This document shows, one piece after another, positions 9,001 to 27,757 of a stretch of 64,000 nt of DNA. Position 1 is the stretch's first letter. Each line of letters opens with the position of its first letter. The DNA lies in IMG/VR virus record IMGVR_UViG_3300042540_001399, positions 1 through 64,000 of that record. One strand, 5' to 3'. The translations under genes and the position numbers were made by a program. Below the pieces are notes generated by a model. That model saw only the letters and a list, made by a program, of their open reading frames with translations. It did no database searches and was not told the origin of the DNA.

Positions 9001-9372
9001 ACTGGTTTAGAAACCACGATATCTTTCAGTCAACCAGGAACACCTAATGTTTATGAGTGTTGGGAAGTTTTAGGTTGGGAATTAGTTGACACGCCAACGA
9101 TAACTTTCTATGCGTTAGGTGGGTTCTACATCGATTGTGTAAGATGTCTAATCGCGAATCCTTGTCCTGACTTTTACGAAGCAATAGATTGTTGTGGAAC
9201 TTTACCTAACGAAGTTGTTTTAAGCAATGGACCGACAGGAAGTGTTTTTGTTGATACTTTAGGACGTTGTTGGACTGTAGGTTTAGCAGTTGCCGGTCCT
9301 GCGACAATAACATCGAGTGGTAACTATTTAGATTGTACAGAATGTATAAACGTTAATCCATGTTCAGCATAA
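1..9372 (+). CDS. Giant collagen-like (G-X-Y) fibre protein with Cys-rich C-terminal head; 5' end lies outside the window
   Basis: Frame 1 reads SGTNGTDGTS... from base 1 and is the same frame as track ORF 2806..9372, so the TTG at 2806 is internal. Repeat region to 7572, then GGGGGG, an ISIYDEG...LNFVG motif typical of phage fibre junctions, a globular region and five Cys-rich repeats; stop TAA 9370-9372. Confidence 0.85.
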   Translation, partial: SGTNGTDGTSGTNGTSGTNGTDGTSGTNGTDGTSGTNGTSGTNGTDGTSGTNGTDGTSGTNGTSGTNGTSGTNGTSGTNGSSGTNGTNGSSGTNGTSGTNGTNGSSGTNGTNGSSGTNGTSGTGGTSGTNGTSGTNGTDGTSGLSGVNGTSGTNGTDGSSGTNGTDGSSGTNGTSGTSGTNGTSGTNGTSGSNGTDGTSGTDGTDGSSGTNGTSGTNGTDGTSGTNGTDGSSGTNGTDGTNGTDGTSGTNGTDGTSGTDGTDGSSGTDGTSGTNGTDGTSGTNGTDGTSGTNGTDGTSGTNGTDGTSGTDGTSGTNGTDGTSGTDGTSGTNGTDGTSGTNGTDGTSGTNGTDGTSGTNGTDGTNGTDGSSGTNGTDGTSGTNGTDGSSGTDGTSGLSGVNGTSGTNGTSGTNGTDGTSGTNGTSGTNGTDGTSGTNGTDGTSGTDGTSGTDGSSGTDGTSGSSGTNGTDGTSGTNGTNGTDGTSGTNGTDGTSGTNGTDGTSGTNGSDGTSGTNGTNGSSGTDGTNGSSGTNGTDGSSGTDGSSGTNGTDGSSGTDGTSGTDGTNGSSGTDGTSGTDGTNGSSGTNGTSGTDGTNGTDGTSGTDGTNGSSGTDGTSGTNGTNGSSGTDGTSGTNGTDGTSGTDGTNGTSGTDGTSGTDGTNGTDGTSGTNGTDGTSGTDGTSGTNGTDGTSGTDGTNGTSGTDGTNGTSGTDGTSGTNGTNGTSGTNGTDGTSGTNGTNGTDGTSGTNGTNGSSGTNGTSGTNGTDGTSGTNGTDGTSGTNGTNGSSGTNGTDGTSGTDGTSGTDGTNGSSGTNGTNGSSGTDGTSGTNGTDGTSGTNGTDGSSGTNGTNGTSGTNGTDGTSGTDGTSGTNGTDGSSGTNGTSGTNGTDGTSGTNGTSGTDGTNGTDGSSGTNGTDGTSGTNGTDGSSGTDGTSGLSGVNGTSGTNGTNGTNGTSGTNGTDGSSGTNGTDGTSGTNGTDGTSGTDGTNGTSGTNGTNGTDGTSGTNGTDGTSGTDGTNGSSGTNGTDGSSGTNGTDGTSGTNGTDGTSGTNGTNGTDGTSGTDGTSGTNGTNGSSGTDGTSGSNGTNGTNGTSGTNGTNGTSGTNGTNGSSGTNGTNGTSGTNGTNGTSGTNGTNGSSGTNGTNGTSGTDGTSGTNGSSGTNGTSGTNGTSGTNGTNGTSGTNGTSGTNGTSGTNGTNGTSGTNGTNGTSGTNGTNGTNGTNGTSGTNGTNGTSGTNGTNGTSGTNGTNGTSGTDGTSGTNGTNGTSGTNGTSGTNGTSGTNGTNGSSGTNGTSGTNGTDGTSGTNGTSGTNGTSGTNGTNGSSGTNGTSGTNGTNGTSGTNGTSGTNGTNGSSGTNGTSGTNGTSGTNGTNGSSGTNGTSGTNGTNGTNGTSGTNGTSGTNGTNGTSGTNGTNGTSGTNGTNGTNGTSGTNGTNGTSGTNGTSGTNGTNGTSGTNGTNGTSGTNGTSGTNGTNGTNGTSGTNGSSGTNGTSGTNGTNGTSGTNGTNGTSGTNGTSGTNGTNGTSGTNGTSGTNGTNGTSGTNGTDGTSGTNGTNGTSGTNGTNGTSGTNGTNGTSGTNGTNGSSGTNGTSGTNGTNGTSGTNGTNGTSGTNGTSGTNGTSGTNGTSGTNGTNGSSGTNGTSGTNGTSGTNGTNGTSGTNGTSGTNGTNGTSGTNGTSGTNGTSGTNGTNGTSGTNGTSGTNGTSGTNGTNGSSGTNGTSGTNGTNGSSGTNGTSGTNGTSGTNGTNGTSGTNGTSGTNGTNGTNGSSGTNGTSGTNGTNGTSGTNGTNGTSGTNGTSGTNGTSGTNGTNGSSGTNGTNGTSGTNGTNGTSGTNGTSGTNGTNGTSGTNGTSGTNGTNGTSGTNGTSGTNGTSGTNGTNGTSGTNGTSGTNGTNGSSGTNGTSGTNGTSGTNGTNGTSGTNGTSGTNGTNGTSGTNGTNGTSGTNGTSGTNGTNGTNGTNGTSGTNGTNGTSGTNGTNGTSGTNGTNGSSGTNGTSGTNGTNGTNGTSGTNGTSGTNGTSGTNGTSGTNGTNGTSGTNGTNGTSGTNGTSGTNGTNGTSGTNGTNGTSGTNGTNGSSGTNGTNGTSGTNGTSGTNGTNGSSGTNGTSGTNGTNGTSGTNGTNGTSGTNGTSGTNGTNGTNGTSGTNGTNGTSGTNGTSGTNGTSGTNGTNGTSGTNGTSGTNGTSGTNGTNGTSGTNGTNGTSGTNGTSGTNGTSGTNGTNGTSGTNGTNGTSGTNGTNGTSGTNGTNGTSGTNGTSGTNGTNGTSGTNGTSGTNGTNGTSGTNGTSGTNGTSGTNGTSGTNGTSGTNGTNGSSGTNGTNGTSGTNGTNGTSGTNGTNGTSGTNGTNGTSGTNGTNGTSGTNGTSGTNGTNGTSGTNGTNGTSGTNGTSGTNGTNGTSGTNGTSGTNGTSGTNGTSGTNGTSGTNGTNGSSGTNGTSGTNGTNGTSGTNGTNGTSGTNGTNGTSGTNGTSGTNGTNGTSGTNGTSGVSGLNGTNGTSGTNGTNGTSGTRGTSGTNGTNGSSGTSGGGGGGAISIYDEGILVQSSATSLNFVGVCTTASSGTSGSVTVNIGCGCEYEYINIASNSGYLELDKPTDFTKIWIGNKLGGWNCCPWDYFEPGVNGNLSRTRYPYYGVPLPTSLYPGDVVRICGSITQINQGGNPCLTYDDIRVGVSYISCSDSSAIIFANTLIPATDLILNGNGTACFNLEVGIDVTLPACDTMLTVNISTTQESECDRTLHFSYTLNADRYCPTFDPTPNLVAQNCCDPLIKEVIPKGTLQVGDFYADSEGNCWEILQKTGDAPDYTRIVSATYNSCSACITANPCPQNIVFESCCEQAPETFTGSLPGINVGDVFVDTYGFCWSATSLTVSPVSGIVYVDTNYGNVDCLNCLTGNPCPNVFELQPCCKFLGGPFFVTAASLGYTPVVGEVFVDTWGNCWTVSKDQATGQNVTAPWIVHDTSYTSCELCLASNPCQDDTIIYATVRNCCSGDVEVVAVPMVYLTGLETTISFSQPGTPNVYECWEVLGWELVDTPTITFYALGGFYIDCVRCLIANPCPDFYEAIDCCGTLPNEVVLSNGPTGSVFVDTLGRCWTVGLAVAGPATITSSGNYLDCTECINVNPCSA
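4..7572 (+). repeat. 9-nt / 3-aa G-X-Y coding repeat (GTN, GTS, GTD, GSS), 841 triplets
   Basis: 7569 nt = 841 x 9; Gly at every third residue wherever checked; synonymous codons heavily varied. Confidence 0.95.
8272..9369 (+). repeat. Five tandem 6-cysteine modules (CC...G-x-VFVD-x-x-G-x-CW...CxxC...NPC)
   Basis: Directly visible in the translation of the fibre C-terminus; units of about 65-85 aa. Confidence 0.9.
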
Positions 9373-9404: not shown

Positions 9405-12323
9405 TTATTTTCTATTATCAAAATAAAATATTACTTCACAATACCACTCTAAAAAATGATCATTAAATAAATCCCATTTAATATCAACACCATCAACAGA
9501 ATAAACTTCATAATTATCAAAGTTAGAAAGAACATTATCCCTAAACCATTTAAATTTACATTTATTAAAATGTTCGTCATCTCTTAAATGAAATTCGGTT
9601 ACAATCTTAGGAATTGTTTTTAAAAATTCTACGTTGCTTGGTTGAAAAACATCGTATTCCCCACCTTCACAATCACATTTTAAAAAATCAATTTTGTTAA
9701 TATTTTCATTTTCTAAAAATTCTTTAAAACTAAATGTAGGAACACTTTCAGTTATTCCATCCCAACTGATTTCAATTTTCTTTTTATCAGTAATTGCTCC
9801 CTGTATAATTTTTACATTATCTTCACCAACATTTTTATGAAGAACTTCAATCTGATATGATAATGGTTCAACTACATAACATTGTTTTGGATTTTTAGGT
9901 AATATTTTATATGTAAATGGACCTAAAGATGCGCCCAAATCTACAACAATATCTCCTTCTTCAACTTCAAAGAATCTTTCATATGTATTATTTTCAAATA
10001 TTTCTTTAGTTGCTTGATTAACATACCAATCACTTTTTTTACCCCAATCGAATGAAGTTTCTTCATTTTTTTCAATCATTAATTCTTTATTTATTATTTT
10101 GTTTATTTCCAAAATGACCATTTCTGAAGTAATTTCTTTCGTACACTCAAACATCCTATCTGTGTTTTTATGTAATGGACACCAATTCCAATCACCAGCA
10201 TCCAATCTTTCCGAATTGAAACATCCGTGACAAACATTTTCATTTATGACTCTGTATGTATTTAAAGTTGTTTCCGCCCATCTTTCACTAAAACCCGATA
10301 TTAAAACAATAGGTAATTCACAAGCCCAAGCCAACCAACTAAGACCTGAACCGAGACCAATAAAAAATTCACATGTTGATAAATCATCAACTACTTCTTG
10401 TAGATTTCCCCCTTTAAATAATTTTACACCTTCAGGATAGTTGTTATTCATGTATCCGTTACCTTCCTTTGAATATATGACACATTCATAACCAAGGGAT
10501 AAAAGGTAGTTCACAACTTCTTGCCATCCATTTGTGTTGTTCCAATATTTTGCCTGAGCAGTTGAATGAAAACCAATACCAACTTTTTTTTCTTTTTTTA
10601 TTTTAGGTAATTTTAATTTTGGTCTTATTTCATTGTATTGTAAACCTAATATATCTGAAGCCGTTTTTTGTAATGGTTGTTTTTTTACATCGACTTTGTG
10701 GATATTTGAATTGATAGTCCCATCTTCATTGTAAAACCAACCTAATCTATATTGTGCGTATATGTTTTGAACAATAACACCCGGTTCGACAAATTCAATT
10801 TCTGTATATTGTTCTTTGAACAAATAGTTCATGAAGGTAGAAACGATTAGTTTACATTTGTGTTTGATTCTAAATTCTTCACAATATGGTAACCATGCTA
10901 AGGTATCCCCTAAAGATTTTGAACCGAATGATATGTAGACTCTTTTATTTTCCAAGTTAAGTAAATTACTATAAATTAGTTGTCCATTTTCTTTTACTTC
11001 GGTTTTCCAAGGTACATAATATTCCGTATTGAGTCTTACCCAATGGTTGATTGGTAATTCGTTTGAATAAATTAAATTATTTTCATCATATATTTTTATA
11101 TCAAGTTTGTTTTCAGTACTACCCAATATTTCCAAAAAAGGATTAACAACAAAATGTTGATTAAACGTGTAATCATTTTTGTGTTTTTGGTTTTGTACTT
11201 TGTCATTTTCTAAAACTCTTTTATAAAATGAATATAATTGTTCCCCAAAATCTTGTTGGGTTTCTATTTCATATGAAGATTCTTTTTCAATTAAACTTAA
11301 TAATTGTTCTGATATTTTTTTATAATCATCATTTTCAATACTTGTGATGTATCTGTCGAACATCCCCATGTACTGAGGTAGGTTTCTGGTCAATATTTTC
11401 ATTCCGTAGTTGATTGCTTCTCTTACAACCAAAGGATTACATTCCCATGTTGAATTGAACATCAAAACATCACATGACTCCATGAATTTATCAACGTCAT
11501 TTCTTTCACCCCATACCGTAACATTTGAAGGTAAGTTTTCCATTATTGGTTTCCAATAAGATTCAAAATTGGGGGCTTGGTTTCCTATGAAGTGAAAATG
11601 TAAATCGGGATTAGTATGTTCCAATAATTTTGCAACTTCGATACCTTCTTTTTGATTTTTTCCTTCGGTCCAAAGACCAACATTAAGAATGTGTGTTTTC
11701 ATTGGGTCCAACCCAAGATTTTCTCTTTCTGTTATTTTTTTCAAAAGAGGTATTTTATGATGTTCATAATAGATTTGTAATTCTTCTAAAATAGGTTTGA
11801 CTTTGTTTTCATATGGGTACAAATGAAGTTCTTTAAGTGATCTTTCAGATTCAAAAGTGGTAAAATGAAAAGGACTAACGAATGAATATGCGTCAGGATG
11901 AAATTTTTTATTATTTGGGTTAAACCAAACATTGTGACACGTTTCAACAATATTCCAAGATCGTTGATTATCATAAAGTTCGTTCAAAATGTCCAATGTA
12001 ATTTTATTAAAACTTTCAAAGGCTTCGGGTATTTCTTCTGAATGAATGATATCTATTTTTAAATCCTTAATTATTTTTAAAAGTTCTTTTTTTCTACTTG
12101 ATTCTGTTGTTGATCCCAAAGTAAAAAAATGACCTACATCTAATAAATCAATGATTTTGTTTCTTTGTACGATATATGTGTCACTAAATTGAGAATATTC
12201 TACTAAAAAAATATCAAGTTTATCTTTGTATTTCAGAAGTGATTCAATTCTTTTTAGGACAAACTGTGGCATACCACCAGTTGATAAATGTGGCGTTAGA
12301 TATAGTATTTTAATTTTTTGCAT
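9405..12323 (-). CDS. Three-domain enzyme: GT4-type glycosyltransferase + TibC/Aah-like protein O-heptosyltransferase + FkbM-family methyltransferase
   Basis: N-term HLSTGG and E-CNPLVVR-E (GT4 EX7E); middle SKSLGDTLAWLPY, FFIGLGSGLSWLAW and CHGC...WCP...FECT iron-finger as in TibC/Aah; C-term VVDLGASLG, VEP, IDFLKCDCEGGE (FkbM). Confidence 0.8.
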   Translation of the reverse strand: MQKIKILYLTPHLSTGGMPQFVLKRIESLLKYKDKLDIFLVEYSQFSDTYIVQRNKIIDLLDVGHFFTLGSTTESSRKKELLKIIKDLKIDIIHSEEIPEAFESFNKITLDILNELYDNQRSWNIVETCHNVWFNPNNKKFHPDAYSFVSPFHFTTFESERSLKELHLYPYENKVKPILEELQIYYEHHKIPLLKKITERENLGLDPMKTHILNVGLWTEGKNQKEGIEVAKLLEHTNPDLHFHFIGNQAPNFESYWKPIMENLPSNVTVWGERNDVDKFMESCDVLMFNSTWECNPLVVREAINYGMKILTRNLPQYMGMFDRYITSIENDDYKKISEQLLSLIEKESSYEIETQQDFGEQLYSFYKRVLENDKVQNQKHKNDYTFNQHFVVNPFLEILGSTENKLDIKIYDENNLIYSNELPINHWVRLNTEYYVPWKTEVKENGQLIYSNLLNLENKRVYISFGSKSLGDTLAWLPYCEEFRIKHKCKLIVSTFMNYLFKEQYTEIEFVEPGVIVQNIYAQYRLGWFYNEDGTINSNIHKVDVKKQPLQKTASDILGLQYNEIRPKLKLPKIKKEKKVGIGFHSTAQAKYWNNTNGWQEVVNYLLSLGYECVIYSKEGNGYMNNNYPEGVKLFKGGNLQEVVDDLSTCEFFIGLGSGLSWLAWACELPIVLISGFSERWAETTLNTYRVINENVCHGCFNSERLDAGDWNWCPLHKNTDRMFECTKEITSEMVILEINKIINKELMIEKNEETSFDWGKKSDWYVNQATKEIFENNTYERFFEVEEGDIVVDLGASLGPFTYKILPKNPKQCYVVEPLSYQIEVLHKNVGEDNVKIIQGAITDKKKIEISWDGITESVPTFSFKEFLENENINKIDFLKCDCEGGEYDVFQPSNVEFLKTIPKIVTEFHLRDDEHFNKCKFKWFRDNVLSNFDNYEVYSVDGVDIKWDLFNDHFLEWYCEVIFYFDNRK

Positions 12324-12379: not shown

Positions 12380-13381
12380 ATGCCAAACTCAGTTAAATAT
12401 TCAACAACAGGGGATACTCGATCAATAAAAAAAGGAAATTTGTATTTTGGTGTTGGTGACGTTCCAAAAGGACCAAGTACCAACACATCTTATTTTAATG
12501 GTATTACACCTGTTACTGGTGGTTATACTGTATATAGGTACGAGCCAACACAAAGTAGTAAACTTGCTTTTTATACTAATCAAACAGGAACTGATCTTGT
12601 AAATTATACAAATAATTTTTTAGGACAAAACTTTTCAACATCAACACAATGTGTGAATTGGTTCAACACACAAACGAATTATGTTTGTGTAAATAAAGAC
12701 TATGACCCAATAATTACTTCAGGACTGACTCTATGTTTAGACGCGTCTTTCACCCCATCATATTCTACTTCTGGAAATTCTTGGTATGATTTATCATATA
12801 ATTCATTTACAACAACTTTAGTTAATGGACCAACATTTGATTCGGGAAATGGCGGATCAATACAGTTTGATGGAACCGACGATCAATGTGTAGTTACGTC
12901 AAATGGGTTTGGTACGTTCAATAATCAGAAATATACAATCGAGGCTTGGGTTAATTTTGCAAGTAATAGTGGGGATATTCCAATTTTTAGTTATGATTAT
13001 TCAAGTTTTAACAACCCATATTATTCTGCTCACCTTAGAAACACGGGTACGGGACAAATATTTTTAGGTTGGAACATGTCGGGATTTTATTACAATATAC
13101 AAACTACATCGACTGTGATTTTTCCCAATACTTGGTATTATGTTGTTGGTATTGTTGAAAGTGGAAGACAACAAATTTATGTTAATAGTAACTTGTGGGC
13201 TAGTGGGACTATATCAGGAACAATAACATTTTATAACACTCCTGTTTATGTTGGGTATTTTCCAAATGCACCTTTAGTCATGAATGGAAAAATTGCCGTG
13301 GTTAGAGTTTATAATAGAGCATTTTCTTCTTCAGAAGTAAGTCAAAATTGGAATGCACAAAAAACAAGATTCGGATATTAA
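12380..13381 (+). CDS. LamG/concanavalin A-like lectin domain virion protein
   Basis: LCLDAS..SY..SGNSWYDLS, FDGTDD, YTIEAWV, WYYVVG, GKIAVVRVYNRA, NWNAQKTRFG pattern of phage LamG proteins. Confidence 0.75.
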   Translation: MPNSVKYSTTGDTRSIKKGNLYFGVGDVPKGPSTNTSYFNGITPVTGGYTVYRYEPTQSSKLAFYTNQTGTDLVNYTNNFLGQNFSTSTQCVNWFNTQTNYVCVNKDYDPIITSGLTLCLDASFTPSYSTSGNSWYDLSYNSFTTTLVNGPTFDSGNGGSIQFDGTDDQCVVTSNGFGTFNNQKYTIEAWVNFASNSGDIPIFSYDYSSFNNPYYSAHLRNTGTGQIFLGWNMSGFYYNIQTTSTVIFPNTWYYVVGIVESGRQQIYVNSNLWASGTISGTITFYNTPVYVGYFPNAPLVMNGKIAVVRVYNRAFSSSEVSQNWNAQKTRFGY

Positions 13382-13422
13382 GGAATTAAATTTTGAAACA
13401 TAATATTTATTTAAAAAAAGTT

Positions 13423-14415
13423 ATGTCAACATCTAGACCTTTTTCATATAATACTGGCTCAACAATAAATGGTACAATACAAGTTGGAAGTTTGGCGGTA
13501 GGATTCCCAACCGTAGGATTTGATTCTACTGGTTTAGAATGGTGGAATGGTCCTGATGAAGATTTAGGTTATGTTATTGCACAACCCGTACCAAATGATA
13601 GTCAACCAACACCTGTGCTTGGACAAACCGCTTCTGTTGGTTTTTTTAGAACCAACGGTTTTGATGATAATGAATTTTTAGACATAACAAATATTTTGTT
13701 AGGAACAAATTATATAGATCCATTTTTAGCATCCTCTGCACTTACAGTAAATGGATTTTGGAATTCTTATCCTAATCCAGTTTTATATTTAGACGCTGGT
13801 GACCCTGCTAGTTATTCAGGAAGTGGTTCCGTTTGGATTGATACAATAGGAGGTAAAACTTTCAACTTAGTTAATGGACCATCTTACGGTCCTGGTTTTG
13901 GTGGAATTCTTAACTTCAACGCGTCAAGTGGTCAATACGCCCAATGTAACACGAGTTTACCAAATTTGAGTAATTGGACGGTTTCTGTTTGGAATTATTA
14001 TGATGGTACAAACGTCGGAGGAGCACCTTGTATTGTTACTGAAATTTATCCGGGTACTACAAGCAACATAAATTATTCAATTGGTGTGAATAATAGTGGA
14101 TTTAACGCCGGGTTTTTCAATGGGGCTTGGAGAGAAAGTGGAACCTATTCATTAAGTCCAAATAATTGGTATTTTATTGTTGGCACATATGATGGTAACA
14201 CATTGAAACTATATATTAATAATACTTTAGTTGGTACAGGAAATTACACTGGTACTCCTATATCATCTCAAGGAGGAATAAGGTTGATGAGAAGATGGGA
14301 TCTTCCCGATTATTGGGGCGGACTGTTAGGTACTGTTGGTATATATGACTTTGCACTCAATTCAGGACAAATATCTGCAATATGGAATACAACTAAATCA
14401 AGGTTTGGTTTGTAA
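13423..14415 (+). CDS. LamG/concanavalin A-like lectin domain virion protein
   Basis: LYLDAGDPASYSGSGSVW, WYFIVGTYDG..LKLYIN, IYDFALNS..WNTTKSRFGL. ATG 13423 after the TATTTAT motif is preferred to the track start at 13393. Confidence 0.75.
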   Translation: MSTSRPFSYNTGSTINGTIQVGSLAVGFPTVGFDSTGLEWWNGPDEDLGYVIAQPVPNDSQPTPVLGQTASVGFFRTNGFDDNEFLDITNILLGTNYIDPFLASSALTVNGFWNSYPNPVLYLDAGDPASYSGSGSVWIDTIGGKTFNLVNGPSYGPGFGGILNFNASSGQYAQCNTSLPNLSNWTVSVWNYYDGTNVGGAPCIVTEIYPGTTSNINYSIGVNNSGFNAGFFNGAWRESGTYSLSPNNWYFIVGTYDGNTLKLYINNTLVGTGNYTGTPISSQGGIRLMRRWDLPDYWGGLLGTVGIYDFALNSGQISAIWNTTKSRFGL

Positions 14416-15948: not shown

Positions 15949-17196
15949 ATGAAAATTTTTATACAAATTGCATCCTACAGAGATCCACAGTTATTACCCA
16001 CAATTAAAAACTGTATTGAAAATTCAAAACACCCCGAAAATTTAATTTTTTCAATTGCAAGACAATATCACATAGAAGATGGGTTTGATGATTTATCTGA
16101 ATTTGAAAACGACAATAGATTCAAAGTGATCAACATACCCTACACAGAATCCAAAGGGGTTTGTTGGGCAAGAAACATGACACAACAACAATACAATAAT
16201 GAAGAATATACCCTTCAAATTGACTCACACATGAGATTTGAAAAAAATTGGGATGAAACATTAATAGGTATGATTAAAGACTTACAGAAAAAAGGATTTA
16301 AAAAACCTTTACTAACAAGTTATGTTTCTTCATTCGATCCTGAAAACGATCCAACAGGAAGGGTAAATGAACCTTGGAGAATGGCTTTCGATAGATTCAC
16401 ACCCGAAGGTTGTGTTTTTTTCTTACCTGAAGTAATTCCTAATTGGAAAGAACTTGATGGTCCTGTACCATCAAGATTTTATTCCGCACATTTTTGTTTT
16501 ACCTTGGGTCAATTTTCTAAAGAAGTTCAGCACGATCCTGAATATTATTTTCATGGAGAAGAAATATCAATCGCCGTAAGAGCATTTACTCATGGATATG
16601 ATTTGTTTCACCCACACCGTGTGGTCATTTGGCATGAATACACAAGAAAGGGTAGAACAAAACAATGGGATGATGATAAAGAATGGTTTTTGAAAAATGA
16701 CTTTTCACACTCTAAAAACAGAAAACTATTAGGTGTTGACGGTGAAGAACTTGGGAATTTGTCAGACTCTTATGGATTTGGAAAACAAAGAACATTAAGA
16801 GATTATGAAAAATATTCAGGAATATTGTTTTCAAAAAGGGCGGTTCAAAAATATACTTTAGACAAAAATTACCCACCAAACCCAAACAATTTTTCTTCTG
16901 AAGAAGAATGGGAAAAAAGTTTCTCAATGATTTTCAAACACTGTATTGATGTATCATTTAATGACGTACCTGAAAATGATTATGAGTTTTGGGTTGTTGC
17001 CTTTCATAATGAAAAAGATGAAACATTATTTAGACATGATGCTGATGTAAAAGAAATAATTCAAATGAAAAAAGATCCTGATGGTTATTGTAAAGTATGG
17101 AGAGAATTTGATACAACTGAAAAACCCAAGTATTGGGTTGTTTGGCCCTATTCTAAATCCAAGGGATGGTGTAACAGATTAACAGGTAATTTATAA
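15949..17196 (+). CDS. GT60-family polypeptide alpha-GlcNAc transferase (Skp1 Gnt1-like)
   Basis: IFIQIASYRD, SKGVCWAR, LQIDSHMRF..NWD, FHGEEISIAVRAFTHGYDLFHP, WHEY motifs. Confidence 0.8.
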   Translation: MKIFIQIASYRDPQLLPTIKNCIENSKHPENLIFSIARQYHIEDGFDDLSEFENDNRFKVINIPYTESKGVCWARNMTQQQYNNEEYTLQIDSHMRFEKNWDETLIGMIKDLQKKGFKKPLLTSYVSSFDPENDPTGRVNEPWRMAFDRFTPEGCVFFLPEVIPNWKELDGPVPSRFYSAHFCFTLGQFSKEVQHDPEYYFHGEEISIAVRAFTHGYDLFHPHRVVIWHEYTRKGRTKQWDDDKEWFLKNDFSHSKNRKLLGVDGEELGNLSDSYGFGKQRTLRDYEKYSGILFSKRAVQKYTLDKNYPPNPNNFSSEEEWEKSFSMIFKHCIDVSFNDVPENDYEFWVVAFHNEKDETLFRHDADVKEIIQMKKDPDGYCKVWREFDTTEKPKYWVVWPYSKSKGWCNRLTGNL

Positions 17197-23293: not shown

Positions 23294-23617
23294 AGATAGT
23301 ATATACCAGTTACCTTCTACAAATTGAAATTGTACACAAGCCCCTTTTTCTAAAAGTAATTCATCCCATTCTTCATCTATAGTCCCTACGTCAGATTTTA
23401 CCAAAACTGTCGTAAGGGATTTTATTATAATTCTTTTTGTTAATTTAGAATTTAGTGTTACTTCACAATTAGGTATACCTTTAACAATTAATAATGATTC
23501 ATCATTGGTATGGTATTGATCTTTGGAAATTATTATTGCCTTTTCCTTTTCTTTAGAACTTTCAACCAATGTTTGATATTTTATTATGTTTTTTCTTGTT
23601 GGTAAATTAGTCATCAT
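23270..23617 (-). CDS. Hypothetical beta-rich protein, possibly virion-associated
   Basis: 115-aa ORF coupled to the neck gene (ATGA overlap); 3' end overlaps the polymerase stop convergently. Confidence 0.6.
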   Translation of the reverse strand: MMTNLPTRKNIIKYQTLVESSKEKEKAIIISKDQYHTNDESLLIVKGIPNCEVTLNSKLTKRIIIKSLTTVLVKSDVGTIDEEWDELLLEKGACVQFQFVEGNWYILSSDGLKMF

Positions 23618-24738
23618 ATAACGTATATTTGTCTTGGCATGGCACGAAACTTTAATGTTTTGTTAAGATTTTCAGCAATTAAAGCTTCTCTTTCCATAAC
23701 TTTATCCGGCCTTAGTCTTGTTAATTTTCCTTCAGCGCCAATAAGTTCTTCAACTAATTTTACTTTTTCGTCCTTACCTTCAGTACCTAATGATTGCCAT
23801 TCCATTGTTAAATCACCATCAGGTGTTTTAAGATTACCGCTAAACTTACCCCTAACTTTGGACAATAATTCCTTAGCAGATGCAACCAACCATCTTCTTA
23901 CCCAAATTTGTGCCGGATTATTTAAATCATTCCACGATAACTTTTCATATGGTACGTCAGATGGTAACTTGATAATATCGGGATTGTCTTTAAGACACTT
24001 ATTTCTATCACCGTCTGTAGTGTCATAATACCAATACCAAACTTTTCCTTTCATCAAAGTTGAATTACCAAAGTCAAATTTACCACCTGGTGTATTCATC
24101 AAATGAACGGCTTTTTTACCATCAGGAAGTGCAGTTACTCTATAGGTCAAATCACCAGCAATTATTCTTCTTTGTATGTTTATTTCTTGCATTCTTAATA
24201 ACATGTCGAATGCCGGCATCAAAAAGTAACTACCTGAAACGTTTCCTACTTGTGCATAACCAGCGGGTCCTGATATTCCACCTCCTGCTATACCACCAAA
24301 AGCCCATGGATCAAAAAGTAAGTTATTCATTTCAGGTGGTGTGAACCAGAGCAATTCATTTAACTCTCTACCCGCAGGTATTTCATATATTTGTTGGCCC
24401 GCTTGTAACTGAATGTAGTCTTTTTTCATAACCCAATCACCACCAGCTTGTAAACCTACAATTTTAGAATACGCGTAAGTGTATCGTGTTTCATAATCTA
24501 AACTTTTGGTCATGAATGCCTTGGTTAAAGATTGGGTTTCGACGTTCAAACCCCAAAGACTTGTCCACTGACTTTCAGTTAACCAATCTTGTATATATTG
24601 TGAATAGTCTTCTATTGAAAATTCCAAAAGAGTGTCTAGTTGTTCATCTTCCAACTCAACCGATCTTAAAGGTGCTCCTAAAATGTGTCTGACTCTTGTG
24701 TATAGTCTTTCTCTTTCTTCATTACTTATAATTGACAT
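23614..24738 (-). CDS. Neck protein / head-tail adaptor (T4 gp13-like)
   Basis: LGAPLRSVELEDEQLD N-terminus and WVRRW..A.AKELL.KVRGKF...PDGDLT C-terminus, as in gp13 homologues. Confidence 0.75.
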   Translation of the reverse strand: MSIISNEERERLYTRVRHILGAPLRSVELEDEQLDTLLEFSIEDYSQYIQDWLTESQWTSLWGLNVETQSLTKAFMTKSLDYETRYTYAYSKIVGLQAGGDWVMKKDYIQLQAGQQIYEIPAGRELNELLWFTPPEMNNLLFDPWAFGGIAGGGISGPAGYAQVGNVSGSYFLMPAFDMLLRMQEINIQRRIIAGDLTYRVTALPDGKKAVHLMNTPGGKFDFGNSTLMKGKVWYWYYDTTDGDRNKCLKDNPDIIKLPSDVPYEKLSWNDLNNPAQIWVRRWLVASAKELLSKVRGKFSGNLKTPDGDLTMEWQSLGTEGKDEKVKLVEELIGAEGKLTRLRPDKVMEREALIAENLNKTLKFRAMPRQIYVI

Positions 24739-24765: not shown

Positions 24766-26898
24766 TTATTGGGTAATAAGTTGATCAAGATTTTTTTTAT
24801 AAAATTTAATAATTTCATTAATATTTTCAGATTGACCTAATTCACGTAGTTTATTTTTGTAGTAATCTATTCTTTCTTTGTAATATTCAATTTCTTTATC
24901 CACATCCCTCACCAATTTAGGTTTTGATTCAGATTTAGTAGGTTCTAAAATTACATCTAATGAAAGGTTTGTACTTATAGGATTTTCATAATAAATGACA
25001 AAAAACTTAGGAAACGTAGATGGATTTGCAACAGTTTGTATTCTTGTGTAGTCATTTCTGAACATAATGTATTTTTCATTAGGTCTGTCCACATATAATA
25101 TAACGTCAACATTATCTTCTTTATATTTTGTGTGGTTATGCCAAGAAGGTACTTTGTAATAATAACCTCTTTCAGACCCAATTTTTTCGACCTTACTAAC
25201 GTCAACTGGTTTTACTTGAACAAAGTATGAAGTGTTTTCAATTATCAAATCGAAGTCTTGACCAAGTTTTCTATCTCTTATATCACCAGCACATCTTTCT
25301 TTAATTTGCCAAGTCATACCTTCTTCTTGTGGGTTAAGTTTGAAAGATTGTATTAAAACTGATTTGGCATAGTTTTCATTTTCCCTACCATCTATTATAG
25401 TTTGGCTATTCAAATTTACTAACCGTTCAGTAAATCTCCCATCGTTACCAACAAGGTCATCAATATTATTCATAATCCAAATCCTAAAATTTTCCAAACC
25501 ATCAGTTTCTTCGACCCATATTTTTTGGATTTCTTTGTGTACCGCACTGTTAGTGTCAAATCTATTTATAATAGACCAATTTCCTAAACCACCATAATTT
25601 TCTTCTGTAAATCTACCACCTATTATTCCATCTTCAGTTTGACATTCATCAGTTTGTATTTTACCTAAACAACCATTCGGATGAAACTCACCTTCACAAA
25701 AAGGATATGCTTTATTTATAATAAGCCTAAAGGATTTTGGTTTGATTGGAAAAACTTCTTTACTTTCATTTAAAACTTTTTTACGAACTGTAGATTCTTT
25801 TAAAGTTTTTTTTTCAATTTTTTTCTTATACAGATCGTTAACAAAGTCCCAATTTACGTGGTTCCAAAATTTTTTGATATAATCATCTTTTTTGTTTTGG
25901 TATTTCAAATAGTACGCGTGTTCCCAAAGATCTAATCCTAAAAGCGGATAACCACCATCTTTAACAATATTCATTAATGGGTTGTCTTGATTTGGTGTGG
26001 ACAATATTTTTAATTTTTTGTTCTTTCCTATCACTAACCAAACCCATCCAGATCCAAATCGTTTTTTTGCTTCTTCATTAAATTGGTCCTTCATTTTTTT
26101 TACATTACCAAAATCTTCGGTAATCTTATTGAAGATTTCATCTTTTGGTATTTGTTTTTTTGGTGACAACATTTTCCAAAATAAAGCGTGGTTAAAGGCT
26201 CCCCCTGCGTTATTTCTTACCGAGTCGTCAAATTTATTTATAGATATTATTATATCTTCTAAATCCATTTCCCCTTCTTTATTTTTTAACGCATCATTAA
26301 GTTTTTTTACATATCCTTTATAATGTTTATTATAATGTATGTTCATAGTCTTAGGATCTACAAACTGTTTCATTGCGGAATATGAATACGGGAGTTTTTC
26401 TATACCAATTTTTTTCATTTCCAAAATGAAGTTTTCTTGGATGTTGAATTTATCTTGAATAAGAATCTTTTCTTCCAATAATTGAATTTTGTCTTGGATT
26501 GGTTTCAATCCTTCAAAAATAATATTTTCTAAATCAGGATTTTCTTTTTCAAAAGTTTTAATAAGTGAACCTGCCAAAGAATTGGCTTCGTCTTCGTTTT
26601 GACCACCAATATCAGGTCCTCTTTTTCTACCTAAAACATTTCTTTGATGACTATGAACCCATTCGTGTGCTAATGTTCTAAGAATATCTCTGTTCATTCT
26701 ATTATTTACTAAAATTTTGATTCCCTTTTCTTTGTGTTGACTTCCTGTGGTCATTCTACCTTCACGTTGTCCCAACAGATGAATTACTAAGTCATCTTTT
26801 AGTGGATACTCTTTTTGTAAAAACTTACAAAAAGTTTTAAGTAGATCTTTTTCTTGCTTGCTTATGTCTGAATTTATATTTTTGAAAGTAACGTTCAT
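24766..26898 (-). CDS. sod: Fusion: HExxH metallopeptidase-like domain + Fe/Mn superoxide dismutase + PD-(D/E)xK nuclease-like domain
   Basis: LRTLAHEWVH...EDEAN; LPYSY, HYNKH, NNAGGAFNH, FGSGWVWL, NQD, DLWEHAYY; D..LGQDF...VQVKP. The SOD domain is clear; flanking domains are tentative. Confidence 0.8.
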   Translation of the reverse strand: MNVTFKNINSDISKQEKDLLKTFCKFLQKEYPLKDDLVIHLLGQREGRMTTGSQHKEKGIKILVNNRMNRDILRTLAHEWVHSHQRNVLGRKRGPDIGGQNEDEANSLAGSLIKTFEKENPDLENIIFEGLKPIQDKIQLLEEKILIQDKFNIQENFILEMKKIGIEKLPYSYSAMKQFVDPKTMNIHYNKHYKGYVKKLNDALKNKEGEMDLEDIIISINKFDDSVRNNAGGAFNHALFWKMLSPKKQIPKDEIFNKITEDFGNVKKMKDQFNEEAKKRFGSGWVWLVIGKNKKLKILSTPNQDNPLMNIVKDGGYPLLGLDLWEHAYYLKYQNKKDDYIKKFWNHVNWDFVNDLYKKKIEKKTLKESTVRKKVLNESKEVFPIKPKSFRLIINKAYPFCEGEFHPNGCLGKIQTDECQTEDGIIGGRFTEENYGGLGNWSIINRFDTNSAVHKEIQKIWVEETDGLENFRIWIMNNIDDLVGNDGRFTERLVNLNSQTIIDGRENENYAKSVLIQSFKLNPQEEGMTWQIKERCAGDIRDRKLGQDFDLIIENTSYFVQVKPVDVSKVEKIGSERGYYYKVPSWHNHTKYKEDNVDVILYVDRPNEKYIMFRNDYTRIQTVANPSTFPKFFVIYYENPISTNLSLDVILEPTKSESKPKLVRDVDKEIEYYKERIDYYKNKLRELGQSENINEIIKFYKKNLDQLITQ

Positions 26899-26921
26899 TG
26901 AAAATAAATATCATTTAAAAT

Positions 26922-26945
26922 AAAAAACCCCATTTTAGATGGGGT
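26922..26945 (-). terminator. Intrinsic terminator
   Basis: ACCCCAT/ATGGGGT stem followed by a U-run on the minus strand. Confidence 0.75.
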
Positions 26946-26969: not shown

Positions 26970-27341
26970 TTATTTTTTGTGTTCTTTAATTTTTGCGTCT
27001 AATTTATCACAACGCGAATCTATATGACTTGACAGGTTTGAAATGTCAAATTTAGTTAGTCTTTCTAAATCTGTAAATCTTCTATCAACTTCGTCACTAT
27101 AGTTGTTTAAATTAATTGATAGATCTTTATGTAGATCATCAATACGATTGTTTATCTCACTAAGTGAGTGTCTTCTTTCCCTTTCTATATGATCAATATA
27201 ATCATGAAATGATTTAACTTCAGTAAAAAAAGTGTTTTTATCAACCTTAACTTTTAACTTTAAAAACGTGACCACAACTGATGTTACAACCGCAACCACA
27301 CCCAAAGTAGATAAAACTGATATTAATATAACTGTTTCCAT
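26970..27341 (-). CDS. Hypothetical membrane-anchored coiled-coil protein
   Basis: N-terminal hydrophobic helix (VILISVLSTLGVVAVVTSVVVTFL) then a charged helical region. Confidence 0.7.
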   Translation of the reverse strand: METVILISVLSTLGVVAVVTSVVVTFLKLKVKVDKNTFFTEVKSFHDYIDHIERERRHSLSEINNRIDDLHKDLSINLNNYSDEVDRRFTDLERLTKFDISNLSSHIDSRCDKLDAKIKEHKK

Positions 27342-27412
27342 AACTTTATTTTTTTTAATGTTTATTAAACCTCATCTTAAAACAAGATAGGTTATCAAAA
27401 ACTTAAATAAAT

Positions 27413-27436
27413 AAAAAACCCCACTATTGGTGGGGT
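27413..27436 (-). terminator. Intrinsic terminator
   Basis: ACCCCAC/GTGGGGT stem with U-run on the minus strand; same stem family as 9375 and 26927. Confidence 0.75.
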
Positions 27437-27454
27437 CTTAAGAAATTTTTTAGA

Positions 27455-27757
27455 TTAATATCTGTATCTACTTCTAAACCTTCTTGATTCATTCATATCC
27501 CCTATTTTTTCCATGGGATTTTCAAGTGGTTCATCTGATTGTTGAGATAACTTCTCAAACAATTTTACAAATTCAGGAGCTGGTAATGTTTTGAAAGCTT
27601 CAGTCGAACATTTTTGGAAATCTAATCTAGCAGGATCACATCCAGGTATGTTACTATGTGTCTTTAGAAGCTCCACATCCGCAGCAAGATTTATTTCTTC
27701 TTCTTTTAAAATTCTTCGAAGAACGTTTTCTATTCTTTTTTCACTATATCTGTTCAT
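27455..27757 (-). CDS. Hypothetical protein, possible internal head protein
   Basis: 100-aa ORF with TATTTAT motif upstream and terminator downstream; VLRRILKEEE leader. Confidence 0.6.
   Translation of the reverse strand: MNRYSEKRIENVLRRILKEEEINLAADVELLKTHSNIPGCDPARLDFQKCSTEAFKTLPAPEFVKLFEKLSQQSDEPLENPMEKIGDMNESRRFRSRYRY

What the first reader, a model, noticed from the sequence alone, without database searches (positions are those of the whole stretch)
24766..26898. Superoxide dismutase sandwiched between peptidase-like and nuclease-like domains, possibly a packaged polyprotein
Seen: an intact SOD with all four metal ligands and Mn-type signatures (GG before the second His ligand, NQD), an N-terminal HExxH domain and a C-terminal D...D..QVK domain. 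Linkers contain (I/L)-x-E sites (FILE, TLKE, VLNE), and the gene has the TATTTAT motif. Known: T4 prohead protease cuts after (L/I)-x-E. Inference: cargo loaded into the head and cut into separate enzymes, for example protecting DNA or the newly infected cell from superoxide.
Basis: partly seen in the sequence, partly recalled or inferred. Interest (0 to 1): 0.65.

Follow-up and report, generated by a model that had tools for sequence, protein, structure and literature searches.

The report
Phage superoxide dismutase polyprotein with cut sites
A lake-water jumbo phage related to T4 encodes one 710-residue protein that strings together a small zinc-protease-like domain, an intact manganese-type superoxide dismutase and a nuclease-like domain. 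Every joint between the parts carries conserved sequence marks of the kind the T4 head-maturation protease cuts, so it is probably chopped into separate enzymes inside the phage head.

Summary
Window 24766-26898 (-) is one intact 710-aa ORF with three parts:
- a zincin-fold HExxH domain (residues 1-129);
- a complete Mn-type Fe/Mn superoxide dismutase (161-368), with all four metal ligands invariant;
- a C-terminal module (379-710) whose core has the PD-(D/E)xK nuclease fold.

The fusion is not a frameshift. It recurs in more than 100 viral contigs and over 1,300 proteins, and independent lake assemblies span both junctions without gaps.

The genome is a 291-kb jumbo phage from lake water with a T4-type head module: a gp21-family prohead protease, a gp23-like capsid protein and T4 gene order.

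Among 120 relatives the modules are shuffled, duplicated or dropped in about ten architectures. Yet 167 of 168 distinct inter-module linkers carry (L/I)-x-E sites, usually as a doublet. That is 7.3 sites per 100 residues against 0.84 inside modules. Outside the catalytic and structural cores, the invariant Glu residues are E129, E160, E368 and E378, all at module borders.

Best reading: a head-packaged polyprotein processed by the prohead protease, a new SOD-bearing variant of phage "polyvalent" or internal cargo proteins. Packaging, cleavage and enzyme activities are inferred, not shown.

The parts
24766..26898 (-). Whole ORF, 710 aa plus stop (P0001): zincin-like domain, linker helix, Mn-type SOD, spacer, nuclease-like module
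   Evidence: The intact ORF recurs in independent contigs.
26904..26910 (-). TATTTAT promoter-like element, 12 nt upstream of the ATG
   Evidence: Genome-wide, 90 of 292 copies lie within 45 nt upstream of genes, at spacings of 11-14 or 19-23 nt. It also precedes the TerL, protease, scaffold and gp13-like genes. Its temporal class is not established.
26917..26944 (-). Hairpin (4-bp G/C stem ends, 26928-26944) followed by a T-run. It looks like a terminator for the upstream 123-aa gene, so the SOD gene appears to have its own promoter.
   Evidence: Read directly from the sequence.
26512..26898 (-). Residues 1-129: zincin-fold metallopeptidase-like domain. HExxH is at 78-82 (window 26653-26667); N-E-D-E-A-N is at 101-106 (window 26581-26598).
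   Evidence: Invariant H78, E79, H82, E102 and E104. AF2 pLDDT 89. VIA Z 9.8 to 1oz9 (YbeY-like), 9.7 to lugdulysin, 9.3 to the ERAP1 catalytic domain and 8.2 to Wss1. All Foldseek top hits are HExxH enzymes. The family has 1,789 clusters, mostly stand-alone proteins of 125-135 aa.
26419..26511 (-). Residues 130-160: long linker helix bounded by candidate cut sites. I127-F-E129 is at window 26512-26520, L141-E-E143 lies inside, and I158-L-E160 is at window 26419-26427. Possible propeptide or targeting segment.
   Evidence: AF2 helix 131-164. E129 is invariant in 106/106, E143 is present in 95% and E160 in 116/116, with aliphatic P3 in 100%. In relatives that lack the zincin domain, this segment is the N-terminal leader and carries 3 sites.
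25795..26418 (-). Residues 161-368: Mn-type Fe/Mn superoxide dismutase module. The Pfam domains span 167-355 (window 25834-26400).
   Evidence: The nearest cellular SODs are 47-53% identical and almost all from Bacteroidota.
25765..25803 (-). Junction doublet: L366-K-E368 (window 25795-25803), a 7-residue variable stretch between the two motifs (residues 369-378 would be released if both sites are cut), then L376-N-E378 (window 25765-25773)
   Evidence: E368 in 119/119 and E378 in 114/115 sequences, P3 L/I in 93-100%, flanking columns 40-56% conserved. The same doublet sits at every other junction type in relatives.
25408..25764 (-). Residues 379-497: Cys-rich plus helical subdomain of the C module. 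C401, C410 and C419 are invariant, and C536 lies in the core.
   Evidence: Confidently modelled but not matched by any solved fold. The searches were dominated by the nuclease core, so this part is barely tested.
24964..25407 (-). Residues 498-645: PD-(D/E)xK nuclease-fold core with invariant E508, D542, D548 and Q561-x-K563
   Evidence: I-Ssp6803I at Z 8.0 (rmsd 3.3, 110 aligned) and Foldseek prob 1.0; Hjc at Z 6.7; also EcoRV, MspI and the SPARDA nuclease. BFVD finds PD(D/E)XK proteins; the Atlas finds PDDEXK_5.
24769..24924 (-). Residues 659-710: conserved helical hairpin tail of the C module
   Evidence: Only generic coiled-coil matches.
23614..24738 (-). Downstream co-oriented gene, 374 aa: T4 gp13-like neck (head-tail adaptor) protein, always adjacent to the SOD gene
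   Evidence: phrog_211 at 1.8e-9. Both termini align co-linearly with T4 gp13. Synteny holds in all 76 related loci.

Best explanation
The gene encodes a modular polyprotein that is loaded into the T4-type prohead. There the phage's gp21-family maturation protease cuts it after Glu at conserved (L/I/V/M)-x-E sites at the module borders.

Expected products are:
- a ~15-kDa zincin-like metallohydrolase (1-129);
- small peptides from the linker helix (130-160);
- a native-sized Mn-SOD (161-368);
- a 10-residue spacer (369-378);
- a ~39-kDa PD-(D/E)xK-fold nuclease-like protein (379-710).

The pieces would stay in the head as internal (ejection) proteins and enter the host with the DNA. The host is probably a freshwater Bacteroidota bacterium. 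The SOD would remove superoxide at the start of infection or protect the packaged genome. The nuclease-like and zincin-like parts would act on host nucleic acid and protein.

Shown: the domain identities, intact catalytic residues, the T4-type protease and capsid, the site conservation, and the module shuffling at the sites.

Inferred: packaging, cleavage, all enzyme activities and the biological role.
For: 1. Three bona fide modules, each also found as a stand-alone gene in other phages.

2. The genome (291 kb, 99% complete) has a T4-type head module in T4 gene order: portal, two small ORFs, protease, scaffold-like ORF, capsid. The protease scores 80.7 bits on PF03420 and is 33% identical to gp21. 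The capsid protein is homologous to gp23, and its N-terminal region aligns so that an I-N-E site sits where T4 has its L-T-E cut (the position of the T4 cut after residue 65 is from PMC5694885).

3. T4 gp21 cuts after L/I-X-E (PMC9026906). In this phage the motif is enriched in the scaffold-like protein (18 vs 8.0 expected, p<0.0005), a 240-aa core ORF (12 vs 6.3) and the capsid protein (11 vs 5.2), but not in the portal (5 vs 7.9). The protease has L-I-E near its N-terminus, as gp21 does.

4. In the part shared by 106-120 relatives there are ten invariant Glu columns. Six are catalytic or structural. The other four (E129, E160, E368, E378) all sit at module borders with an aliphatic P3 and poorly conserved flanks.

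5. The 120 relatives show about ten architectures: N-SOD-C, N-SOD only, SOD-C-C, N-SOD plus two unrelated C modules, and one or two copies of a ~100-aa small module before or after C. Their 168 distinct linkers hold 425 sites against 188 +/- 11 after shuffling. 151 linkers hold two or more sites (shuffle maximum 71). Density is 7.3 per 100 aa against 0.84 inside modules.

6. Relatives without the zincin domain keep the sites. They start with a ~24-residue leader carrying three sites, which resembles a cleavable targeting peptide.

7. The gene always lies directly upstream of, and co-oriented with, a gp13-like neck gene.

8. An unrelated 1,547-aa marine protein combines SOD, the same zincin family and a zeta-toxin-like kinase, again with site doublets at its junctions.

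9. Precedents exist. PBCV-1 packages a Cu/Zn SOD (PMC7019647). T4, phiKZ and SPN3US head proteins are cut at multiple X-E sites (PMC5694885).
Against: - No proteomic, transcript-timing or biochemical evidence exists.
- The 710-aa architecture has no N-terminal capsid-targeting propeptide: the zincin fold starts at residue 3.
- No other ORF of the genome shares the linker helix, so there is no common targeting tag as in the T4 internal proteins.
- The gene lies about 50 kb from the head module, between a SNF2 helicase and polB. The stand-alone zincin homologue of cyanophage S-SRM01 sits in a replication cluster.
- The promoter-like motif is not specific to structural genes as far as could be told.
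- The related sequences are not independent, so the linker statistics overstate significance.
- Part of the conservation in the 130-160 helix could be structural.
- The nuclease motif has Gln where the family has Asp or Glu, so activity is uncertain.
- A packaged active nuclease would have to spare the phage's own DNA.
Confidence: 0.6

Rival explanations
1. A "polyvalent protein" in the sense of Iyer et al. 2017 that is processed by its own N-terminal zincin-like peptidase, or not at all. It would be delivered or act as one chain, and the prohead protease would play no part.
For: The zincin-like MPTase is the commonest domain of polyvalent proteins and is proposed to autoprocess them (PMC5512222). 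The N domain has exactly that core: strands, a helix, the HExxH helix and a Glu helix. The same zincin family occurs inside other large multidomain phage proteins with kinase, exonuclease or SOD domains.
Against: Nine SOD-C-C relatives lack the zincin domain, and none was found in two of their ~10-14 kb loci, yet they keep all junction sites. The sites match the specificity expected of the phage's own gp21-type protease and the motif enriched in its scaffold proteins. The zincin family is mostly stand-alone 130-aa proteins with nothing to process in cis.
Confidence: 0.17
2. An uncleaved, cytoplasmic multidomain enzyme made during infection, for example for host DNA breakdown or repair with local superoxide protection. 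The SOD would also serve as a dimerisation scaffold, and the conserved Glu sites would be structural linker features.
For: The gene sits among DNA-metabolism genes (polB, SNF2 helicase). Fe/Mn SODs are obligate oligomers and PD-(D/E)xK nucleases usually work as dimers (general knowledge). The stand-alone zincin homologue lies in a replication module. Four invariant Cys in the C module could bind a metal or cluster that superoxide would damage; this is speculation and was not tested.
Against: This does not explain why the same (L/I)-x-E doublet recurs at nine different junction types whose linkers otherwise differ in sequence and length. It also does not explain why modules are swapped, duplicated or lost exactly there, or why each predicted product has the size of a natural stand-alone protein.
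Confidence: 0.13
3. Separate proteins are made from one gene by internal translation starts, for example at the nearly invariant M161 just before the SOD.
For: M161 is present in 111 of 117 sequences, and the segment from M161 resembles a normal SOD N-terminus.
Against: M161 is replaced by Ala or Thr in several relatives, while E160 is invariant. The other junctions have Ser, Asn or Ala, not Met, after the Glu.
Confidence: 0.04
4. Assembly or sequencing artefact: three genes fused by frameshifts.
For: None found.
Against: Five contigs are 99-100% identical and more than 70 diverged contigs keep one ORF. There are 1,310 related proteins. Contigs of three independent lake runs from 2016-2024 span both junctions with no gaps.
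Confidence: 0.01

Closest known systems
T4 internal/cargo head proteins (IPI-III, Alt) processed by the gp21 prohead protease
   Same: The phage has a gp21-family protease, a gp23-like capsid and T4 head gene order. The candidate cut sites have the T4 L/I-X-E form. The sites are enriched in its scaffold and core proteins.
   Different: T4 cargo proteins are single-function proteins with a 10-20-residue N-terminal targeting peptide cut once. Here three or more enzymes would be released from one chain by internal cuts, and the main architecture has no N-terminal propeptide. T4 has no homologue of the zincin domain and no SOD.
Polyvalent proteins of phages and conjugative elements (Iyer, Burroughs, Anand, de Souza, Aravind 2017, PMC5512222)
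   Same: Unrelated enzymatic domains sit in one polypeptide of a portal/terminase phage. A zincin-like MPTase domain is present. Domain make-up varies among relatives. Delivery with the DNA is predicted.
   Different: That paper does not mention superoxide dismutase (0 occurrences). It proposes processing by the embedded MPTase. Here the junctions carry prohead-protease-type sites, and these persist without the MPTase.
Multiply processed head and ejection proteins of giant phages phiKZ, 201phi2-1 and SPN3US
   Same: In those jumbo phages, gp21-related proteases cut many inner-head proteins after Glu at several sites, and the propeptides are thought to target proteins to the prohead (PMC5694885).
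   Different: Those phages use A/S/G-X-E, not L/I-X-E. Their capsids and genomes are unrelated to this lake clade. The known substrates lose propeptides rather than being split into several enzymes.
Virion-packaged Cu/Zn SOD of chlorovirus PBCV-1 (and other giant viruses of eukaryotes)
   Same: A virus-encoded SOD is made late, packaged and thought to lower superoxide early in infection (PMC7019647).
   Different: It belongs to a different SOD family (Cu/Zn vs Fe/Mn), is a stand-alone protein and comes from a virus of a eukaryotic host.
Stand-alone Fe/Mn SOD genes of phages (e.g. Pseudomonas phage PA5oct sodB, Vibrio phage 2.275.O)
   Same: Same enzyme family in large phages.
   Different: Those are single-domain genes only 25-47% identical to this SOD module. 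None carries the flanking modules.

Membership tests
Fe/Mn superoxide dismutase (PF00081 + PF02777) | Both Pfam domains above the curated cut-offs | tested here: met
   74.2 bits (cut-off 27) and 134.6 bits (cut-off 20.9). Best PDB hit E 1e-63.
Fe/Mn superoxide dismutase (PF00081 + PF02777) | Four metal ligands (His, His, Asp, His) and second-sphere His/Tyr/Gln | tested here: met
   H188, H237, D323 and H327, plus H192, Y196, Q304, W325 and E326, are invariant in 117-120 of 120 relatives.
Fe/Mn superoxide dismutase (PF00081 + PF02777) | Mn-type signature: Gly-Gly before the second His ligand and the active-site Gln from the C-terminal domain | tested here: met
   G232-G233 and Q304 (N-Q-D) are invariant, and the top solved relatives are Mn-SODs. 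Actual metal use cannot be read from sequence.
Fe/Mn superoxide dismutase (PF00081 + PF02777) | Superoxide dismutation activity | not testable with these tools
   Needs an enzyme assay.
Zincin-like metallopeptidase (gluzincin type; MPTase of polyvalent proteins) | HExxH on a helix | tested here: met
   H78-E79-x-x-H82 is invariant in 54 sequences and lies in helix 70-87.
Zincin-like metallopeptidase (gluzincin type; MPTase of polyvalent proteins) | Third ligand Glu on the following helix | tested here: inconclusive
   E102 and E104 are invariant at the start of helix 100-119. Which one, if either, binds metal was not determined.
Zincin-like metallopeptidase (gluzincin type; MPTase of polyvalent proteins) | Zincin fold (mixed sheet, N-terminal helix, two C-terminal helices) | tested here: met
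   VIA Z 8.2-9.8 over 107-116 residues to YbeY-like, M30, M1 and Wss1 catalytic domains. Nearly all of the top 50 rows are HExxH-type metallohydrolases. Foldseek E values are only 0.02-0.1.
Zincin-like metallopeptidase (gluzincin type; MPTase of polyvalent proteins) | Membership of a curated sequence family | tested here: not met
   Only sub-threshold DUF6055 (18.7 bits, cut-off 27) and DUF3920. PHROGs gives nothing significant. No PDB sequence match.
PD-(D/E)xK nuclease superfamily | Restriction-endonuclease-like alpha/beta core | tested here: met
   Residues 498-645: I-Ssp6803I at Z 8.0, Hjc at Z 6.7 and 6.2; Foldseek prob 1.0 at E 1.4e-3. PDDEXK_5 and PD(D/E)XK proteins appear in the Atlas and BFVD.
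PD-(D/E)xK nuclease superfamily | Catalytic motif: Glu on the first helix, Asp at the start of strand 2, (D/E)-x-K on strand 3 | tested here: inconclusive
   E508, D548 and K563 are invariant and lie in the expected secondary-structure elements, but the third acidic position is Gln561 in all 47 sequences. No superposition of side chains was possible.
PD-(D/E)xK nuclease superfamily | Nuclease activity | not testable with these tools
   Needs an assay.
Substrates of the T4-type (gp21, Peptidase_S77) prohead protease / head-internal cargo | The phage encodes a gp21-family protease within a T4-like head module | tested here: met
Substrates of the T4-type (gp21, Peptidase_S77) prohead protease / head-internal cargo | Conserved L/I-X-E sites in exposed segments | tested here: met
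   The motif definition is from PMC9026906.
Substrates of the T4-type (gp21, Peptidase_S77) prohead protease / head-internal cargo | N-terminal capsid-targeting propeptide | tested here: not met
   The 710-aa form starts directly with the zincin fold. Only the zincin-less relatives have an N-terminal leader with sites. No shared tag was found elsewhere in the genome.
Substrates of the T4-type (gp21, Peptidase_S77) prohead protease / head-internal cargo | Presence in virions as cleaved fragments | not testable with these tools
   Needs virion proteomics.
Polyvalent proteins (Iyer et al. 2017) | Two or more unrelated effector-type domains in one chain of a phage, with variable architecture and often a zincin MPTase | tested here: met
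   Definition from PMC5512222.
Polyvalent proteins (Iyer et al. 2017) | Delivery into the host with the DNA | not testable with these tools
   No experimental data.

The most novel reading that the evidence does not exclude
T4-related jumbo phages of lakes, and probably of the sea, may use the prohead protease's short L/I-X-E motif as punctuation for plug-and-play cargo polyproteins. Whole enzymes would be gained, duplicated or swapped between conserved cut-site doublets, loaded into the head as one chain, released there as separate proteins and injected with the DNA. An active Mn-SOD would be the constant injected module. That would imply that superoxide is a significant barrier in the first moments of infection of freshwater Bacteroidota, or a threat to the packaged genome.
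Probability: 0.4. Interest if true: 0.8.

Novelty: new variant of a known kind. Interest (0 to 1): 0.68.

Why it matters
Polyprotein processing is a hallmark of many eukaryotic RNA viruses. It is not a recognised way for tailed phages to deliver several enzymes. If the reading holds, three things follow.

1. A simple sequence rule, a doublet of aliphatic-x-Glu between folded modules in a phage with a gp21-type protease, would let head cargo be predicted from metagenomes.

2. It would show how cargo repertoires evolve by module exchange at cut sites.

3. It would add an antioxidant enzyme to the list of proteins a phage may inject. The parallel is the packaged Cu/Zn SOD of chloroviruses, and it points to oxidative stress as a factor at phage entry.

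The clade is abundant and recurrent in lakes: more than 595 related capsid genes, and the same gene in at least 14 runs from many studies. It is therefore ecologically relevant. The ~130-aa zincin family (about 1,800 clusters) and the nuclease-like module are uncharacterised phage protein families worth biochemical study.

Tried and rejected
- **Frameshift or assembly artefact:** rejected.
- **Internal start at M161:** unlikely, because M is replaced by A or T in relatives while E160 is invariant.
- **Sequence searches for the flanking domains:** Pfam, PHROGs and PDB found nothing significant for the N and C domains or for the alternative C modules. tblastn of the C module against cultured phages found nothing.
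- **Relationship of the alternative C modules (A3, A4) to this C module:** hhalign gave probability below 1%. The Atlas feature search for A3 gave only leads, SmaI and HinP1I restriction enzymes at 0.88-0.89. Its R-G-x-D-F-E ... P-Y-D ...
- **The ~100-aa small module:** no Atlas hit and no Pfam hit.
- **A shared targeting helix elsewhere in the genome:** hmmsearch of the 130-166 profile against all ORFs found only the gene itself.
- **Using the TATTTAT element to date expression:** it precedes head genes, but also many unannotated genes, so this is inconclusive.
- **Second copies of the modules in the genome:** none.
- **T4 homologue of the zincin domain:** none.
- **Geometry of the four invariant Cys:** could not be checked because model coordinates are not exposed. 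The idea of a metal or Fe-S site stays untested.
Full report
**What is there**

Window 24766-26898 on the minus strand is a single open frame of 710 residues, P0001. Pfam finds the two domains of an Fe/Mn superoxide dismutase at residues 167-245 and 252-355, far above the curated cut-offs. It finds nothing significant on either side. PHROGs adds nothing.

The window is the first 64 kb of a 290,887-bp IMG/VR virus record rated 99% complete. GC content is about 32%. The genome has no close cultured relative.

**The three modules**

*SOD.* The best solved relatives are manganese SODs (E 1e-63). In an alignment of 120 relatives the four metal ligands (H188, H237, D323, H327) are invariant. So are the gateway His and Tyr (H192, Y196), the Gly-Gly before the second ligand, and the Gln of N-Q-D that marks Mn-type enzymes. 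The nearest cellular SODs are 47-53% identical and come almost entirely from Bacteroidota: Chitinophagaceae, Flavobacterium and Pedobacter. Together with the capsid's nearest cultured relative, Flavobacterium phage immuto, this suggests a freshwater Bacteroidota host.

*N domain.* H78-E79-x-x-H82 and N101-E102-D-E104 are invariant in 54 non-redundant sequences.
- The AF2 model (pLDDT 89) has strands, a helix, the HExxH helix and a second helix starting at the conserved Glu residues. A 34-residue helix follows.
- VIA-align gives Z 8.2-9.8 to the catalytic domains of a YbeY-like protein, lugdulysin, M1 aminopeptidases and Wss1. Nearly all the top rows are HExxH-type metallohydrolases. Foldseek E-values are weak but list the same enzymes.
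- A profile search of 1.84 billion representatives finds 1,789 clusters. Most are stand-alone proteins of 125-135 residues that match profile positions 1-129. One is a 132-aa ORF in the replication cluster of cyanophage S-SRM01.
- Some hits lie inside large multidomain proteins that also carry AAA_33/zeta-toxin-like kinase, RNase T or SOD domains.

*C module.* C401, C410, C419, C536, E508, D542, G546-Q547-D548 and Q561-x-K563 are invariant in 47 sequences.
- The model (pLDDT 88.6) has a core at residues 498-645 that matches I-Ssp6803I (Z 8.0, Foldseek probability 1.0), Hjc resolvases, EcoRV, MspI and other PD-(D/E)xK enzymes.
- BFVD and the ESM Atlas return PD(D/E)XK proteins, a 501-aa phage "SOD" with the same module, and stand-alone 300-360-aa phage proteins.
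- The third acidic position of the motif is Gln, so catalytic competence is open.
- The Cys-rich part (379-497) and the helical tail (659-710) have no match.

**Not an artefact**

The same ORF is found at 99-100% identity in five other viral contigs and at 45-76% identity in some 70 more. The word-index search returns 1,310 related proteins. Contigs from three independent lake-water runs dated 2016-2024 cover both junctions without a gap or frameshift. A riverine metatranscriptome holds two 151-nt contigs from the SOD part. This is weak evidence of transcription, since DNA carry-over is possible.

**A T4-type head**

The genome encodes a Peptidase_S77 prohead protease (80.7 bits) that is 33% identical to T4 gp21 across the catalytic region. 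It lies in a module ordered as in T4: large terminase, portal, two small ORFs, protease, an acidic repetitive 585-aa scaffold-like ORF, capsid protein.

The 629-aa capsid protein is a gp23 homologue (E 9e-26). Its N-terminal region aligns with the gp23 propeptide, so that an I-N-E site (residue 60) falls where T4 has L-T-E. T4 removes a 65-residue propeptide there (PMC5694885).

According to PMC9026906, gp21 cuts after the short motif L/I-X-E. Its giant-phage homologues cut after A/S/G-X-E, often at several sites per protein. In this phage the L/I-X-E motif behaves as expected for that specificity:

| Protein | Observed | Expected | Note |
|---|---|---|---|
| Scaffold-like ORF (585 aa) | 18 | 8.0 | none of 2,000 shuffles reach it |
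| Core ORF (240 aa) | 12 | 6.3 | often followed by Ser |
| Capsid protein | 11 | 5.2 | |
| Portal | 5 | 7.9 | not over-represented; T4's portal is also not processed |

The protease itself has L-I-E near its N-terminus, as gp21 does.

**The junctions**

This is the key result. In P0001 the motif is not over-represented overall (14 observed, 9.9 expected). Position and conservation are what stand out.

In the part shared by 106-120 relatives only ten columns are invariant Glu. Three are zincin residues and one is the SOD active-site Glu. Two are inside the folds. The other four are E129, E160, E368 and E378. All four have Leu, Ile, Val or Met two residues upstream in 98-100% of sequences (L/I/V/M: 100% at E129, E160 and E378, 98% at E368), and all lie in otherwise variable segments.

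They fall exactly at the module borders:
- the end of the zincin unit, matching the length of its stand-alone relatives;
- just before an M-K-K-I-G start that looks like a native SOD N-terminus;
- twice, ten residues apart, after the last SOD helix.

The relatives then supply a natural experiment. Parsing them with module HMMs gives these architectures:

| Architecture | Count |
|---|---|
| N-SOD-C | 71 |
| N-SOD plus a different C module, D1 | 19 |
| SOD-C-C | 9 |
| N-SOD plus small module | 5 |
| SOD-C | 4 |
| N-SOD | 3 |
| N-SOD plus another C module, D2 | 3 |
| N-SOD-small-C | 2 |
| N-SOD-small-small-C | 2 |
| N-SOD-C-small-small | 1 |

Whatever is joined, the linker carries the motif, usually as a doublet 5-10 residues apart. 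This includes the linker between the two C copies and both sides of every small module. Over 168 distinct linkers there are 425 sites, against 188 +/- 11 after shuffling each linker. 167 linkers have at least one site, and 151 have at least two (shuffle mean 53, maximum 71). The density is 7.3 per 100 residues, against 0.84 inside modules. The sequences are related, so these numbers are not independent trials. The pattern nevertheless holds across nine junction types with dissimilar linkers.

The SOD-C-C proteins have no zincin domain. None was found elsewhere in two such ~10-14 kb loci. They begin instead with a ~24-residue peptide carrying three sites directly before the SOD. That looks like a cleavable leader.

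An unrelated 1,547-aa protein from a marine scaffold combines a nucleotidyltransferase-like N-terminus, SOD, the same zincin family and a zeta-toxin-like kinase. It again has site doublets at the junctions.

**Context**

In all 76 related loci the gene sits between a SNF2 helicase and a 374-aa gene, on the same strand, with polB convergent downstream. The 374-aa protein aligns at both termini with the T4 neck protein gp13 and hits its PHROG.

Upstream of the ATG there is a hairpin plus T-run, and then T-A-T-T-T-A-T 12 nt before the start. The heptamer is a real genome-wide signal: 90 of 292 copies lie within 45 nt upstream of genes, at two preferred spacings. It precedes the terminase, protease, scaffold-like and gp13-like genes. 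Most other genes that carry it have no annotation, so I cannot call it a late promoter.

**Interpretation**

The chain is taken into the prohead and cut by the gp21-type protease at the border sites. That releases a zincin-like protein, an Mn-SOD and a nuclease-like protein of native sizes, plus small linker peptides that can leave the shell. T4-type proteases are known to act inside assembled proheads, so cutting at these sites implies head location. This last step is inference from T4 biology.

The protein also fits the "polyvalent protein" concept of Iyer et al. (PMC5512222), in which the zincin MPTase is the commonest domain. That paper does not report SOD. Its proposed self-processing fits less well here, because the sites persist without the zincin.

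A packaged SOD has a precedent in chlorovirus PBCV-1 (PMC7019647).

What the three enzymes do after entry is speculative. Options are removal of superoxide, attack on host DNA (the phage encodes methyl- and glycosyltransferase-like genes nearby, which might protect its own DNA), and proteolysis of a host factor.

**Weaknesses**

- There are no experimental data.
- The main architecture has no N-terminal targeting peptide.
- No shared tag exists in other ORFs of the genome.
- The gene is far from the head module.
- The nuclease motif is a variant.
- Part of the conservation in the 130-160 helix may be structural.

I put the processed-cargo model at about 0.6. Rivals are a self-processed or unprocessed polyvalent protein at about 0.17 and an uncleaved cytoplasmic enzyme at about 0.13.

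**Verdict**

This is a new, SOD-bearing, cut-site-punctuated variant of known phage cargo and polyvalent proteins, widespread in lake jumbo phages.

Noticed in passing
window 1-9372 (+), running off the 5' end: A giant ORF of more than 3,100 residues. Most of it is Gly-Thr-Asn / Gly-Thr-Ser triplets, which is collagen-like (a 9-nt period with about 776 copies). It accounts for the 46% GC content and the strong purine skew of the first 8 kb. It ends in a Cys-rich domain with repeated F-V-D-T-x-G-x-C-W units. Several frames are open across the repeat, so mechanical ORF lists there mislead. It is probably a fibre or whisker protein.
   Followed up: partly
G000 252234-263652 (outside the window; L079:8235-19653): A T4-like head module: large terminase, portal, 240-aa and 155-aa ORFs, gp21-like protease, capsid, and a 358-aa ORF. 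It also holds a 585-aa scaffold-like protein that is extremely acidic, with tandem L-D-E-E-M-Y-E-D repeats.
   Followed up: partly
L164:1831-6474 (TARA marine scaffold, protein P0256): A 1,547-aa protein combining a nucleotidyltransferase-like N-terminus, Fe/Mn SOD, the same zincin family and a zeta-toxin/AAA_33-like kinase. It has (L/I)-x-E doublets at the junctions. This is a second, independent SOD-plus-zincin polyprotein.
   Followed up: partly
genome-wide; e.g. window 26904-26910, 24761-24755 region upstream of the gp13-like gene: An A-T-A-T-T-T-A-T element lies upstream of about 28% of genes, at two sharp spacings from the ATG (11-14 nt and 19-23 nt). The short spacing often follows a terminator hairpin and would give almost leaderless mRNAs.
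   Followed up: partly
L176 (contig binned as an uncultured Polynucleobacter MAG): This contig carries the phage SNF2 helicase followed by a 517-aa leader-SOD-divergent nuclease-like ORF. It is a phage fragment mis-binned into a bacterial MAG, so it should not be used as host evidence.
   Followed up: partly
G000 229792-231549 (outside the window; L172): A 585-aa phage ORF with an N-terminal membrane segment, a PAS/GAF-like middle part, and C-terminal His-kinase-like H, N and G boxes (PHROG 'kinase' hit). It is a possible phage-encoded sensor kinase.
   Followed up: no
window 9405-12323 (-), 12380-14415 (+), 15949-17196 (+): A 972-aa ORF with a C-terminal methyltransferase-like domain, two ORFs matching a virion structural protein family (phrog_8510), and a glycosyltransferase (phrog_24687, E 1e-164). 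The transferases hint at DNA or virion modification.
   Followed up: no
window 26970-27757 (-): The two small ORFs between the SNF2 helicase and the SOD gene are present in only some related loci. One is 123 aa with a membrane segment and coiled coil; the other is 100 aa. Together they form a small variable spot just upstream of the polyprotein.
   Followed up: no
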